Shown here one piece after another: positions 52,701 to 58,700 of a stretch of 64,000 nt of DNA (its first letter is position 1; each line of letters begins with the position of its first letter). The stretch is from Phallusia mammillata (Eukaryota): NCBI GenBank assembly GCA_965637545.1, contig OZ281497.1:9114001-9178000 (forward strand), read 5' to 3'. The position numbers and the translations under genes are program-made. The notes below the pieces were generated by a model. It saw nothing but the letters and a program-made list of their open reading frames with translations, ran no database searches and had not been told where the DNA came from.

Positions 52701-55700
52701 ATAGAATCAGTGATTGTATAATCCATAAATGTGGCACCACTTGTTCCAGGATAACCGAGCCACATTGCCTGCGAAACAAATCAATTGTTAATCAAGGGGT
52801 TGCTAAGTTTTTACAACAGAACGCAGTGAAAACTGGTTGTTTAGAGCCTTTTTTTATTTTTCCCAAATTACATTTATGGTGCTTTTTTACCACAAATGAT
52901 TTTATTTTGAAGTGAAAAAGGGGTGCCAACCTGAATGGGTGCTGGTCTCAAAGAAAATATTTCATTCCTCGCCCCCTTGGTGTAACCGTTCATGTTAAGC
53001 AAGACATGAATACCATCTTGGTGAATACGATCAGCAGCCTTTAAAAAAACGAATGATTTAAAAGTGTCAATCAACAAAACCTAAACGCCAAGTTTACTGA
53101 AAGCAAGGCTTTCAAAATAAAACACCAGAAAAAAATTCTAAGTGTGGCATAACTAGATTTTTATAAACTTATAAGGGTATTTGAAAACACATAAAACAAA
53201 AGCAAAAACATTAATGTATCTTGTTACCTTTCCATTGCATTGAAGCTGTGAAAGGTCAACAAAGTGTGCAACCTCACTCGAAACTTTCTTCCGGAAGTTT
53301 GTGCCATCATCAGGACTTAATGCATAACAGAACACCTAAAACACAAATTTCAACATGCTTGTACACATCTCAAATTTTAACAGCAAACAGAGATTGCTGT
53401 AAAAAAAAACTACCTCCACTTTGTCAAGGTTGTGCACACCAGGAATGCTTTGCATCAAGTGGGAGGTTGGGTGATTACCGAAGTCTGAGCTGACATAACC
53501 GATTCTCAGTTTGCCTCCACTTAGGTTGAGACTCTTTGGATGCTCATATGGAGGTTTGTGTAGAATGTTTATCTGAAAAGTTTATAGGCATGTGATTGGC
53601 TAGACTCGAAAACTATACTTTGGTAAAAAAAAATTTGATGTGTTGTATAGGTACCTTATCCAAACACAAAGCTCCATGACGTGCAGCAATAGCTTTACGG
53701 AATTCATGAGTAAGGGGGTAGAGCATGGAGTGATGAGGATGTACAGATGGCAGACGATTTTTCGCAAGCTGATCAGCAACAATTGTCACCAATTTCTTCA
53801 TTCTTTCATCATAGTCACTCCAGTCACAGATAATCTTTAAAAAAATGTACCAAATAAATCAAAGAGTAAAACCAAAATTTCTCGTTTTCAACAGTTCTGT
53901 TAGGTTTCAAATAGATGCAAAATAGTTGTTGACCAACCTGCAGGCAATGTGCAAGATTGCAGTAAGCATCAGGAAAGTCAGGTTTCAATTTAAGCGCTGT
54001 TCTGTAGGATTGAATGGCAGCAGGAATGCTTCCACTGTCCTTGTGCACTGAAGCAAGGTTGCTATGTGCATCAGCAAATGCAGGGTTAATTTGAATGGCT
54101 CTTGTGTAGCACTGCAGAAAAAATATAAAGTTTTGAAACATAGCAGTGGTTTTAAATTGTTTTTCTCCCTAAAAACCCTTTATTACACACAAACCCATTT
54201 ATAATTTCATTTGTAGTTACATTTTAAACAAGTTAAGTAATTTTAAAATATCTGATGATGTGCTAACCTGAATTGCTCCCTGCACATCTTGCATCTCTTT
54301 TAGAGTGTTTCCCATGTTGGAGTAAGCATCAGCAAATGTTGGACTTATGCGAATAGCTTCCTTGTAATGAAGCAAAGCCTCCTGAAGTTTGCCTTGTTGC
54401 TGTAGTACACTGGCCAAATTGGAATGGGCTGCTGCAAACTCTGGGAAAACCTAGAAAGACACAACATGTTACAAGGTTTCCAGGATAGAGCATTCAACTT
54501 GTTTGTAGCAAGCATCACATTTTCGCACCGAAAAACAAAAAATAAACCATTTGTGCCGTGAATTTTTACAACCAATATGAACCGTGGCTGATTTTTATGC
54601 TGTTCTACAAAAAATAATTTTTTAACACTTAAATGACGAATATATTGGGCCAAATACAAGTTTTAATTCCGAAGCAGTAAAAACTGAAAGTATACCTCTA
54701 GAGCTTTGGTGTACAGTTGGATTGCTTCTTCAATAAAACCCTGTTCACGCTTGATGTTAGCAAGGTTGTTCAATGAATCAGCATGAGAAGGACAAAGTCG
54801 CAGTGCCTTGTTGTAACATTCTTCAGCGTCTTGTACTTTGCCTGTATACATAGTTTTGTAATGTTAGAACACTCAGCTACAGCATAGTTTTTCACACATT
54901 TCAACCAAAGGTTTTCATACCTTTTTCTTTGAGAGCATTAGCAAGGTTGCAATAAGCATCAGGAAAGTGCGGTTGTAGTTCAATAGCTCTTCTGTATGTG
55001 TCTATGGCCAAATCAATAAGGCCTTGTTCATAGTAGACACAAGCAAGATTGCCGTGTACAACTGCATGGTTTGGTGACAAGTTTAATGCACGAAGATAGG
55101 CAGCAACAGCTCTGTGAATATATAAACATGTTATGCCTATTTTGTTGTACAGTTAGGGCTTGTGAAAGTTGGGCACACATCAAAAGGTTTAAACTAACCT
55201 GTCAAATATTCTTGCCTCTTTGAGAACATTTCCAAGGTTAATATAGGCATCCAAAAAGTTTGGATCCAGTTTCACAGCCTAAAATATAAACCAAAAATTA
55301 AAATTAAAAATCGGATAAAACAACAACAACAAAAAGTCACTGCACATCAGAAAGTCACAATCCAACAGGACTGATTACAAGCTTACTTTTTCAAAGTGGT
55401 GGATTGCAAGCCAAATCTCTCCTTGGCTGTTGAAAACACAACCCAGATTGCTCCAAGCAACGGCGAAGTTTGGTTGAGTCTCTATTGCTTTTAGGTAGCA
55501 TGCCTGTTTGTCATCAAAGATCCAGGAGTTGTCAGAAGAAAGGTAGAGAAAAAAGAAACAATAATGTTCGATTAGTGGCCAGTTGTGGCAATTTAAAGTA
55601 AAATGCAGTGCAAAGGAGTAACTTATAATAGTCAGTTATGTAAAGGTGCCACAGGGCCAAGACAGATTTGGAGTCTTTAATGGCACTGTGATGCATGCAG

Positions 55701-58700
55701 GTCTAGTTTTTGAAATGACACAAGTCAAAATGTAAATCGGAATTTGGGCACCGTCACATAATTGGTCGCGAAGAGCAGAGAGAAAGGTAGGCAGCTGCAT
55801 CAATTCTACACTAGTTTGACGAGTTTGGACACAAACAAACAGAAATTTGACGAAAATTTATTTATCAGTGTTTTCAATGCAGCTGTCTTAGAAAAGGATC
55901 AAATTGTGCAGGAAGGGGCTGCCGCTAGTTATTTCCAGGACTTGTGATTGAGACACTATGCTAATACCATCCCAGTTGCTAGGAAAAAAGCACCCATGTT
56001 TCACCTGAAGATCAAGCGGTCCCGCACAATTTGTTGAGGCTCGCAAGTAGCGCAGATTTCCAATGCACTGCAGTTTTTGTTCGCAAAGCGCGCAGCTGCT
56101 CGATATGGACTCAATTGAGATGCATCAAAACCCAAGGGTTTAACATGTTACAAAACAAGTTTTTTATGTCCAAATTCAAGTTTTGCAGTTAGAAAAGTTA
56201 TCCCATGAATGTTTTTTTCAATTTGTTACATACACAAGTTTTTGTAACCCCCTGGAAACATACTGTACCGCTGACTTATACGCTGTAGAATAATGCTGTC
56301 ATTGGGCAATTGCGGCAAGATCCAAGTTACTCATTTCGAAGCCTGTGTCCTCATCCCAGACGACTGGAGAAGAATCGTTCACACCTTTTGCGCACAGTTA
56401 ACACAAAAAGCGCAAAAGAAAGAAACAAAATTGAACATGTGTTGTTAGTTTTGTGATTTTAAATGCTTTTCTTCTTAACCATTGCCTATCTTTTTACCAA
56501 AATTTACACTAGAGAGCTTGAACTAGAAGAAAAATCAGTTCTTACATTTTTCCATAAAACATAATTCTTCCCCCGTTTCAAGCTACAGAGTTATTCACAG
56601 ACTGCATTTATGATTTGAAACTACATTTATGAAGAATTGCTTTTCAAATTTCATGTGGCTATTTTTGGCACACACATACGTTTTGCTGCAACAAAGTTGG
56701 ATGTTTCCTCAGTTGGCATTTACAATACAAATCAATGTATATACATGTCCAATGTAAAATTCATACATATCCAAGTTCTATGGTCCACTATACTATTCCA
56801 GTATTATAAAACTGACTGCGGAAACACCACAATAAAGATAGTTTGAAGATGAAACCACAACAGAGACAACAGCAGTGCACAGTTTCGTGAATGTTAAAGC
56901 ACAAAGCTCAACCGAAATTGATCATAAAAATTTCAAAACAAGTTTGGAAACCATTCGAAACATTTCAGAAACACATTTACAGAAAAATAGTTCACATGTG
57001 CGTTTAAGCTTGTTGTCTGTGTCGGCCTACGCAATTTAGCTGGACACACCCTTTATTAATACAACACGTTTAATGCACTTGTTTAGGCTTTTTGGGCAGT
57101 GAATTAGCTGCATTGCAAGGTAAAGACAGCAATGCAACTAAGAGGCCTAGCCTTTCAAAGAAGGTCAAATTGTCGCAAAATGCAGCGTTTAACATTAGGG
57201 TTATGTCAAAATCCAAAGTCGCATATGCGCAGCTAAGCAGCAGGCAGCATGTTTGCCCTATATGTCAAGCATAGTCATTTTATTTGCTACAAAGGACATT
57301 TATGTGTGACAATTAGGGCAAACAGTGCAATCGCAATTGGGTAGCGCGGAACAGCATTTCATTTTGGAAATGTAATGCTGCCACCAAGGCAGGTCAATTG
57401 GCCTGTTCATTTTTTAACCTGGAGACAAATATGTATGTGTGTGCAAATTCTCGCTAATGGAGAAACATTTGAACTGGAGTTGAAATGATTTGTTAAATGT
57501 CCTCTAAATGCAGCCTGTGCCTCCACAACAGAGCAACAAGAGAAATTTTGATTTAACATTTCTTGGACCAGTGCATTTTTTAGAAATTGGTTTTAAAAGC
57601 TCTGTTGTGTGAAGTAACTCTGCTTCTAAGGATAAAGTTAACATCACTATCCACTAAAAATGGCCTACACCAATATGTAAATCAGTGGGTACGTGCACAA
57701 ACACCACAACATGCAAGGGTACCTTTGCTTCTTCTAGCCTGCCTAAAGCTTTCAACAAGTTTCCAAGATCACTTCTGACACAATAAAGGTCCTTAAAAAC
57801 AAGATTCTTGTTAAATAATTTGTCTAACACACAAACTACAAAAACTCTTTTTTAATTTTTAAGCTAGAAGATTATTTGCGCCTCAGCCTAACCAGTAGTA
57901 GAATTTGAAAGAAAATGTTACATGACACAGTATGAAATTCAATGTGGTGTGAGGACACTTGCATCAACCTTATTACAGACTGATTTATGTCCGCAAAATT
58001 TAAGATTAAGAAATATTGATGTACAGCAAACAAGCAACAGCAGTGACAACTTACTGGGTTTATCTGTAGAGCAGAAAAATACGCATGAACTGCACCCTCC
58101 AAATCTCCGGCTGTAACAAGGGCTGCTGCCAAATTGATGTACCCATCAATGAAGTCTGGTTTCAACCTAACTGCATGTCTGTAATAAAAGAATCATCAAA
58201 ATTATTTTCTGCACACTGTCACAAGCAACCATACTAGTTAAAATTTGTAAATATCAAATTTTGAAATAATTTATAGCTGATGTTTTACCTGTAATGATCA
58301 AGTGCCTCTTGTAGTTGCCCCCTTTCTTTGTAAACATTTCCCAAATTTGAATATGCCTCAGCTAACATTGGGTTGGTTTTAATGGCGTGTTTTGAAAAGT
58401 ATGCCGACCTAAAATTGAAGTTTTTATTACAGATGTCCTTAGTGCAAGCATTAAAATTAATTGAGTGAAAAACATACTTTTCCAAGCGCCGGCACTGAAA
58501 ATGAATTGAGCTTAGCAAAAGCAGAACTCCAGTGTTGTCAGGTTCCTGTTGCCACAACTGCATACAGTGTCTTTCAGCATTTTCATAATCACCTGCTTGG
58601 TATTCACGATGTGCTAGTTCTGCAAGGGCTAAAAGAAAACCAGCCATTTAGATCCTACACAACTTTAACATGAAATACACATAATGCCAAAATTAATAAA

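What the first reader, a model, noticed from the sequence alone, without database searches (positions are those of the whole stretch)
55504..57722. OGT intron at the position of the human O-GlcNAc-sensing detained intron is selectively huge
Seen: this 2,219-nt intron separates a 69-nt exon ([23 protein letters not shown]) from a 117-nt exon ([10 protein letters not shown]...HFEK). The other 20 introns are 69-649 nt, and the 649-nt one contains repeat insertions. No MITE termini were recognised in this intron. It keeps CpG-rich patches (8 CpG in 56011-56102, 7 in 56281-56412) inside a gene body with about 1 CpG per 100 nt. Established: human OGT intron 4 lies at this same GRLEEAK|ACYLK junction. 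It is detained in the nucleus when O-GlcNAc is high and spliced when O-GlcNAc falls, under control of a conserved intronic silencer/decoy-exon element. Inference: this nutrient-sensing splicing feedback may be conserved in tunicates, and so be older than vertebrates. I know of no description of it in an invertebrate chordate.
Basis: partly seen in the sequence, partly recalled or inferred. Interest (0 to 1): 0.85.

Follow-up and report, generated by a model that had tools for sequence, protein, structure and literature searches.

The report
Retained long intron in tunicate OGT
The one oversized intron of this sea-squirt-like O-GlcNAc transferase gene sits at exactly the position of the human nutrient-sensing "detained" intron, is found unspliced in public RNA data, and is also the long (and in acorn worms the conserved) intron of the same gene in other invertebrates, so this splicing brake may be far older than vertebrates, though its response to O-GlcNAc is untested.

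Summary
A minus-strand OGT gene (49772-59051, 22 exons) has 21 introns. One is 2,219 nt (55504-57722); the others are 69-649 nt (median about 160).

Its flanking exons align to human OGT residues 155-177 and 178-216. Human exon 4 is that same 69-nt, 23-codon exon, so this is the positional orthologue of human intron 4.

New evidence:
- In RNA assemblies from three separate studies, a contig runs unspliced through the whole intron and across both junctions. Its k-mer depth gives an unspliced share of 8-21% (unspliced / (unspliced + spliced)). A fourth run shows only the spliced form.
- The orthologous intron is 2.2-3.6 kb in two hemichordates, a brachiopod, an annelid, a bivalve, two sharks and a bird. 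It is the longest OGT intron in the hemichordates, the brachiopod and this window.
- Between the two hemichordates it aligns almost end to end (E 1e-101), with about 80% identical blocks. Their other long introns do not align.

Limits:
- No sequence similarity to the vertebrate silencer was found.
- No cryptic exon was seen.
- No other tunicate could be fetched.
- O-GlcNAc responsiveness was not tested.
- Contigs cannot prove that the short introns are not also retained.

Verdict: probably a retained, regulatory intron of the vertebrate kind.

The parts
49772..59051 (-). OGT gene as seen in RNA: 22 exons, 1026-aa product, about 76-78% identical to vertebrate, hemichordate and arthropod OGT
   Evidence: Spliced contigs; gene model; identities
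58866..59051 (-). First exon seen in RNA, holding the start codon (MYSQINKED...). The ATG at 58647 lies in intron 1 and is not used.
   Evidence: Joint 58628->58866 in all four RNA runs; translation
57723..57791 (-). 69-nt exon (exon 5 here), [23 protein letters not shown], equal to human exon 4 (residues 155-177)
   Evidence: PMC5535036
55504..57722 (-). The 2,219-nt intron, positional orthologue of human OGT intron 4. It is found unspliced in RNA assemblies.
   Evidence: contigs cover 55476-57751 in X4 (one 2,276-nt contig), X14 and X7; the spliced joint is present in all four runs
57717..57725 (-). 5' splice site AAG|GTACCC. It matches the CAG|GTAAGT consensus at 5 of 9 positions and has no G at +5, making it among the weakest in the gene (median 7 of 9).
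57654..57656 (-). Stop codon reached 22 codons after the exon if the intron is not removed. The retained form would encode only the first TPRs.
   Evidence: ORF 57654..57830
55504..55550 (-). 3' splice-site region. The last 20 nt before the AG are purine-rich (gatctttgatgacaaacag). A CTGAC branch-point-like motif and a pyrimidine tract lie further upstream.
55387..55503 (-). 117-nt exon [10 protein letters not shown]...HHFEK, equal to human residues 178-216
56011..56102 (.). CpG-rich patch (8 CpG in 92 nt)
   Evidence: function unknown
56281..56412 (.). Second CpG patch (7 CpG)
   Evidence: function unknown
56331..56440 (-). Candidate decoy exon from another first-reader note. No spliced joint was seen here, and its 5' splice site matches the consensus at only 5 of 9 positions.
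   Evidence: sequence read, 5' splice-site matches counted by hand

Best explanation
The 2,219-nt intron is the tunicate counterpart of vertebrate OGT intron 4. It is a slowly or incompletely removed intron, and its retention produces an unproductive OGT RNA with a stop after 22 intron codons. Retention therefore sets how much productive OGT mRNA is made.

Shown here:
- Positional orthology with human intron 4.
- Exceptional length within a compact gene.
- A weak 5' splice site.
- The unspliced RNA form at an unspliced share of 8-21% in three studies and absent in a fourth.
- The same intron is long in other animal phyla and selectively conserved within hemichordates.

Inferred by analogy with mammals:
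- That the unspliced RNA is held in the nucleus.
- That splicing speeds up when O-GlcNAc falls, giving negative feedback on OGT.
- That internal elements of the intron mediate this. Those elements are lineage-specific in sequence.
For: Orthology: and PMC5588854.

Length: 2219 nt against 69-649 nt.

Retention:
- All four runs carry 13 GT-AG joints, so they are RNA.
- A contig covers 55476-57751 without a break.
- In X4 its depth is 34.4 against 407.4 for the spliced junction contig.
- In X14 the figures are 11-15 against 56; in X7, 13-17 against 121.
- Every contig laid on the 5.9-kb stretch is accounted for by the mRNA, the spliced junction or this intron.
- Depth is slightly higher at the 3' part of the intron than at the 5' part, unlike a nascent-transcript gradient.
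- In one search, 12 RNA-type runs of three studies hold 78-97% of the intron's words, and five others hold none.

Weak 5' splice site.

Cross-phylum length: 2654 and 2546 nt (hemichordates, longest of about 19 introns), 2498 (Lingula, longest), 3627 (Owenia, second longest), 3316 (Solemya), 3340, 3230 and 2981 (two sharks and a bird).

Hemichordate conservation:
- The intron aligns over 927 nt at 67% (E 1e-101) and nearly end to end.
- Two blocks are about 80% identical. One holds a TTAAC branch-point-like motif, a pyrimidine tract and CAG.
- The 1220-, 964-, 795-, 774-, 704- and 629-nt introns of the same gene do not align.
Against: - No homology to the vertebrate ISS was detected, and no k-mers are shared beyond a reverse-complement control.
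- No cryptic-exon joints appear in the contigs, and no strong internal 3'/5' splice-site pair exists.
- Library types (poly(A) or total RNA) are unknown. A long intron with a weak donor site could give 8-21% unspliced RNA without being regulated.
- Contigs drop rare variants and short alternative paths, so the absence of retained short introns is weak evidence for selectivity.
- No second tunicate was available, so constraint on this intron's sequence within tunicates is unknown.
- O-GlcNAc dependence is untested.
Confidence: 0.5

Rival explanations
1. It is an ordinary long intron. It is removed more slowly only because it is long and has a weak 5' splice site. The unspliced RNA is normal pre-mRNA with no regulatory role, and the size is inherited from an ancestral long intron.
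For: - The unspliced share (8-21%) comes from contig depths in libraries of unknown type.
- The 5' splice site is weak.
- There is no cryptic exon and no similarity to the vertebrate silencer.
- Early introns of genes are often the longest (general knowledge).
Against: - In a gene whose other introns have shrunk to a median of about 160 nt, this one stays at 2.2 kb.
- It stays at 2.2-3.6 kb in every genome examined, whatever the size of the other introns.
- It is selectively conserved in hemichordates and in vertebrates (PMC5588854).
- The slight 3'-over-5' depth does not look like nascent RNA.
Confidence: 0.3
2. The intron is kept long because it carries DNA-level regulatory elements, such as an enhancer or internal promoter marked by the CpG patches. 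Retention is incidental.
For: - CpG patches with observed/expected near 0.8-1.4 sit in an otherwise CpG-depleted gene body.
- The hemichordate conservation could equally reflect enhancers.
- In human, intron 4 also holds the proposed mOGT start (PMC4901358).
Against: - One conserved hemichordate block looks like a 3' splice site (branch point, pyrimidine tract, AG), which is an RNA-level signal.
- The window has no in-frame ATG upstream of the 117-nt exon, so an mOGT-like product is not possible.
- No transcript start inside the intron is visible, although contigs cannot show starts.
Confidence: 0.15
3. The length is due to a recent transposable-element insertion.
For: None positive. Only 64 kb of this genome could be searched for copies.
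Against: - No terminal or internal repeats and no copies in the window.
- No ORF above 69 aa and no Pfam domain.
- CpG depletion like the old gene body.
- A single unbranched 2,276-nt contig in RNA run X4.
- Orthologous introns of the same size in other phyla.
Confidence: 0.04

Closest known systems
Human/mouse OGT intron 4 detained intron with its intronic splicing silencer and decoy exon (Park et al. 2017, PMC5588854; Tan et al. 2020, PMC7261177; Govindan & Conrad 2025, PMC12017769)
   Same: - The intron sits at the identical position and phase, after the 69-nt exon encoding residues 155-177.
- It has kilobase size: about 3.8 kb in human (a 4,008-bp exon 4-intron 4-exon 5 fragment) and 3.0-3.3 kb in sharks and a bird.
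- An unspliced isoform coexists with fully spliced mRNA.
- Retention gives a premature stop.
   Different: - No detectable sequence similarity to the vertebrate silencer core was found. That core is shark intron positions 1621-2176 against bird 1559-2108.
- No decoy exon was seen.
- Nuclear detention and the O-GlcNAc response are not shown.
- Published conservation of the silencer reaches only to jawless fish.
Decoy-exon-mediated intron retention in long introns (Parra et al. 2018, PMC6097662; 2020, PMC7373989)
   Same: It is a long (>1 kb) retained intron in an otherwise efficiently spliced gene. In hemichordates there is a conserved internal 3' splice-site-like signal.
   Different: In the window no internal exon with good splice sites was found, and no inclusion isoform is seen in the contigs.
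Drosophila sxc (OGT) long-intron splicing control (cited in PMC5588854 after Ashton-Beaucage et al. 2010; an sxc retention event is reported in PMC11765297)
   Same: An invertebrate OGT whose output depends on removal of a long intron.
   Different: It depends on the exon junction complex, no ISS-like element is reported, and the intron involved was not compared here.

Membership tests
OGT intron-4-type O-GlcNAc-responsive detained intron | The intron lies directly after the 69-nt exon encoding OGT residues 155-177, in phase 0 | tested here: met
   human exon 4 defined in PMC5535036
OGT intron-4-type O-GlcNAc-responsive detained intron | An RNA isoform that keeps this intron while the other introns are spliced | tested here: inconclusive
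   Unspliced contigs across both junctions are present in three studies at an unspliced share of 8-21%. No other intron of the 5.9-kb stretch is represented. However, contigs cannot link the retained intron to spliced neighbours and may drop short retained introns.
OGT intron-4-type O-GlcNAc-responsive detained intron | Nuclear, polyadenylated, post-transcriptionally spliced (detained) RNA | not testable with these tools
   Library type and cell fraction of the runs are not given
OGT intron-4-type O-GlcNAc-responsive detained intron | Retention rises with high O-GlcNAc and falls with low O-GlcNAc | not testable with these tools
   Needs Thiamet-G / OSMI treatment. Variation between studies (0 to about 20%) is compatible with regulation but uninformative.
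OGT intron-4-type O-GlcNAc-responsive detained intron | Homologue of the vertebrate intronic splicing silencer | tested here: not met
   An nhmmer profile of shark, shark and bird ISS searched against the window intron gives best E 0.59. blastn finds nothing.
OGT intron-4-type O-GlcNAc-responsive detained intron | This intron is more conserved within its clade than the gene's other introns | not tested
   No other tunicate locus could be fetched. The feature is met in hemichordates and vertebrates (PMC5588854).
Decoy-exon retained introns | An internal exon-like unit with functional 3' and 5' splice sites, occasionally included and carrying a premature stop | tested here: inconclusive
   No joints inside the intron in four RNA assemblies. 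No pair passes a pyrimidine fraction of 0.68 or more together with 7 of 9 or more 5' splice-site matches. Rare NMD-sensitive forms would be missed.

The most novel reading that the evidence does not exclude
The OGT detained intron may be a bilaterian invention, not a vertebrate one. Under this reading, the intron after the 69-nt TPR exon has been kept as a kilobase-sized, slowly spliced regulatory intron from annelids, molluscs and brachiopods through hemichordates and tunicates to humans. The silencer or decoy sequence inside it would have been replaced lineage by lineage, while the position, the size (2.2-3.8 kb) and the function (autoregulation of O-GlcNAc levels) persist.
Probability: 0.3. 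Interest if true: 0.85.

Novelty: new member of a known kind. Interest (0 to 1): 0.68.

Why it matters
O-GlcNAc homeostasis in mammals rests on regulated splicing of OGT intron 4. Published conservation of its silencer stops at jawless fish, and Drosophila is reported to lack it.

A tunicate with a compact 9-kb OGT gene and one retained 2.2-kb intron would be a small, tractable model for this feedback. It could be studied with electroporated minigenes and drug treatment of embryos. It would also push the origin of the mechanism back before vertebrates.

The cross-phylum pattern found here is a long intron at the same site in six invertebrate genomes, with exon-level conservation in hemichordates. 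That makes the question of how old this nutrient-sensing splicing switch is directly testable. It also points to conserved hemichordate blocks as candidate functional elements.

Tried and rejected
1. Finding another tunicate OGT locus.
- Two database searches were run, one with a krill OGT (P0040) and one with a mixed profile of a centipede OGT plus five window exons (A2).
- They returned only arthropods and a few other animals. This OGT is about 76-78% identical to every non-tunicate OGT, so tunicates never reach the listed top 120.
- A first profile with all 22 exons (A1) was misaligned by MAFFT because of the TPR repeats, and was discarded.

2. Cross-phylum homology of the intron.
- blastn in all pairs, nhmmer with vertebrate and hemichordate profiles, and shared k-mers against a reverse-complement control all found nothing beyond chance.
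- The marginal hits (E 0.003-0.05) are T-rich or lie outside the conserved cores.

3. Intron-hosted RNA genes. There is no Rfam family in the window intron or in the orthologous introns. One sub-threshold snoZ162 hit in Ptychodera (26.7 bits against a cut-off of 45) lies outside the conserved blocks.

4. Transposable-element relics. There are no repeats, ORFs or Pfam domains.

5. An mOGT-like alternative start. There is no in-frame ATG in the stop-free stretch upstream of the 117-nt exon.

6. Variants in RNA contigs as a proxy for constraint. Only 10 differences occur in 2.2 kb, too few to say anything.

7. Look-ups for pike, lamprey, Nasonia and Limulus OGT loci found no record.

No human sequence was fetched or compared.
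Full report
**What is there**

The window carries an OGT gene on the minus strand. Six-frame translation and 13 spliced joints shared by four RNA assemblies gave the 5' two-thirds of the gene. 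A homologue-guided model gave the rest. The result is 22 exons, a 1026-aa product and 21 introns. The intron lengths are 237, 69, 110, 263, 2219, 108, 87, 79, 245, 156, 103, 82, 78, 189, 162, 242, 150, 224, 649, 290 and 353 nt.

The 2,219-nt intron is 55504-57722 (GTACCC...AAACAG on the minus strand). It is flanked by the 69-nt exon 57723-57791 and the 117-nt exon 55387-55503. RNA shows a further upstream exon (58866-59051) that holds the start codon, and the ATG at 58647 is intronic. The long intron is thus intron 5 of this gene.

**Positional orthology**

The 23-residue exon matches residues 155-177 of full-length human OGT chains (7yea/7yeh) without a mismatch. The next exon matches residues 178-216. 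Willems et al. (PMC5535036) showed that skipping of human exon 4 deletes 69 bp, corresponding to residues 155-177. Park et al. (PMC5588854) showed that the intron after it, intron 4, is retained in response to O-GlcNAc through a 526-nt silencer. They reported the silencer as conserved down to jawless fish and absent from Drosophila. Sacoman/Trapannone-type analysis (PMC4901358) places the proposed mOGT start in the same intron. The window's long intron is the positional orthologue.

**Content of the intron**

- It has no direct, inverted or tandem repeats of note, and no copy elsewhere in the 64-kb window.
- It has no tRNA and no Rfam family.
- It has no ORF over 69 aa and no Pfam domain.
CpG observed/expected for the intron (0.53) is close to that of the whole gene (0.47) and far below the window average (1.0). 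The intron therefore looks as old as the gene body, with two small patches that escaped depletion.
- The 5' splice site AAG|GTACCC matches the consensus at 5 of 9 positions against a gene median of 7. The 3' splice site is not unusual by pyrimidine content.
- Reading through from the 69-nt exon meets a stop after 22 codons. No in-frame ATG precedes the downstream exon, so an mOGT-like product is not encoded.

**RNA evidence**

Twelve RNA-type runs from three studies hold 78-97% of the intron's 31-mers. Five other RNA-type runs hold none. I laid four runs from four studies on 53200-59100. All four carry the 13 GT-AG joints, so all four are RNA.

| Run | Unspliced contig depth | Spliced junction depth | Unspliced share, U/(U+S) |
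|---|---|---|---|
| X4 | 34.4 | 407.4 | 7.8% |
| X14 | 11-15 | 56.2 | about 17-21% |
| X7 | 13-17 | 121.5 | about 10-12% |
| X20 | none | single 3,816-nt spliced mRNA contig | none seen |

In the first three runs, contigs run through the whole intron from 55476 to 57751. They extend about 28 nt into both flanking exons, which means reads bridge both unspliced junctions.

The number of contigs laid per run (4, 6, 5 and 1) is fully accounted for by the mRNA pieces, the spliced junction and this intron. None of the other 12 introns in the stretch is represented. Depth is slightly higher toward the 3' end of the intron, the opposite of a nascent-transcript gradient. No joints lie inside the intron.

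Caveats: library types are not on record. Contigs give one depth per contig. Assembly can remove short, rare alternative paths, so the absence of the short introns is weak evidence. I had only one call of this tool, so no control intron from another gene could be laid.

**Comparative evidence**

No tunicate OGT could be retrieved (see tried and rejected). I fetched OGT loci of these species:

- Ptychodera flava (L001) and Glandiceps talaboti (L002), hemichordates;
- Lingula anatina (L003), a brachiopod;
- Owenia fusiformis (L004), an annelid;
- Solemya velum (L008), a bivalve;
- two chondrichthyans (L005, L006) and a bird (L007).

All have the 69-nt exon and an intron at the same place. The table lists that intron in each species.

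| Species | Orthologous intron (nt) | Rank and other introns in the gene |
|---|---|---|
| Ptychodera | 2654 | longest of about 19; next is 1220 |
| Glandiceps | 2546 | longest; next is 1620 |
| Lingula | 2498 | longest |
| Owenia | 3627 | second; the preceding intron is 4298 |
| Solemya | 3316 | second or third of 21 |
| Shark (L005) | 3340 | other introns reach about 15 kb |
| Shark (L006) | 3230 | other introns reach about 10 kb |
| Bird | 2981 | longest resolved OGT intron; next is 1503 |

From a compact tunicate gene to an 81-kb shark gene, this intron stays between 2.2 and 3.6 kb. In human it is about 3.8 kb, judging from the 4,008-bp exon 4-intron 4-exon 5 fragment.

Between the two hemichordates the intron aligns almost end to end (927 nt at 67%, E 1e-101, plus flanking blocks). 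The other long introns of the same gene (1220, 964, 795, 774, 704 and 629 nt) give no alignment.

Two blocks reach exon-like identity:

- L001:4202-4275 is 80% identical. It contains TTAAC, a pyrimidine tract and CAG, which is the layout of a 3' splice site.
- L001:4660-4855 is 81% identical.

The indels between the species are not multiples of three, so the conservation is not coding. No annotated nested gene and no Rfam family explains it. This mirrors what Park et al. describe for vertebrates. I recovered the vertebrate pattern here as a roughly 590-nt shark-bird core (68% identity).

**What is not conserved**

Neither blastn, nor nhmmer profiles of the vertebrate core or the hemichordate blocks, nor shared k-mers link the introns of different phyla. 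If the function is shared, the elements have turned over.

**Interpretation**

The most economical reading is that this is a retained, regulatory intron of the vertebrate intron-4 kind. It has a weak donor, kilobase size held against strong intron shrinkage, and a sizeable unspliced RNA pool that varies between data sets. Retention gives an unproductive RNA, and the same intron is singled out by length or conservation in other phyla.

The steps that make it a 'nutrient sensor' rest on analogy only. These are nuclear detention, response to O-GlcNAc and the identity of the cis element. I put 0.5 on regulated retention with a function in OGT dosage. I put 0.3 on an ordinary slowly spliced long intron, 0.15 on DNA-level regulatory content as the reason for its size, and under 0.05 on a recent insertion.

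**Novelty**

The mechanism is known in mammals. I found no paper in the searched library that reports it for a tunicate or any invertebrate deuterostome. The finding is best filed as a probable new member of a known kind. A more novel reading, a bilaterian-wide origin, is not excluded.

Noticed in passing
L001:3266-5919 and L002:3955-6500 (hemichordate OGT loci): The intron orthologous to human OGT intron 4 is selectively conserved between Ptychodera flava and Glandiceps talaboti. Two blocks are about 80% identical (L001:4202-4275, with a 3' splice-site-like signal ending at 4249, and L001:4660-4855). Other long introns of the gene are unalignable.
   Followed up: partly
window 58629-58865: The ATG at 58647 ([13 protein letters not shown]...) continues in frame into the second exon and looks like a start codon, but it lies inside intron 1. 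RNA joins 58866 to 58628, and the start codon is in the upstream exon 58866-59051.
   Followed up: yes
window 51250-51499 (inside the 649-nt intron 50946-51594): There are 16 CpG in 250 nt (observed/expected 1.44) inside the otherwise CpG-poor gene body. I did not examine this.
   Followed up: no
window 49500-49750 and 59000-59250: CpG-rich, GC-rich stretches (observed/expected 1.5-1.65) lie just beyond both ends of the OGT gene. They are probably the promoter of OGT (59000-59250) and of a neighbour.
   Followed up: no
L008:3106-3191 (Solemya velum OGT locus): A selenocysteine tRNA gene lies inside an early intron of the bivalve OGT gene (Rfam RF01852, 51.4 bits, above the gathering score).
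   Followed up: no
window 57250-57324: A 24-nt inverted repeat with a 27-nt loop (83% complementary) gives sub-threshold microRNA-precursor hits (about 20 bits against cut-offs of 65-74, E about 1). It is probably chance.
   Followed up: no
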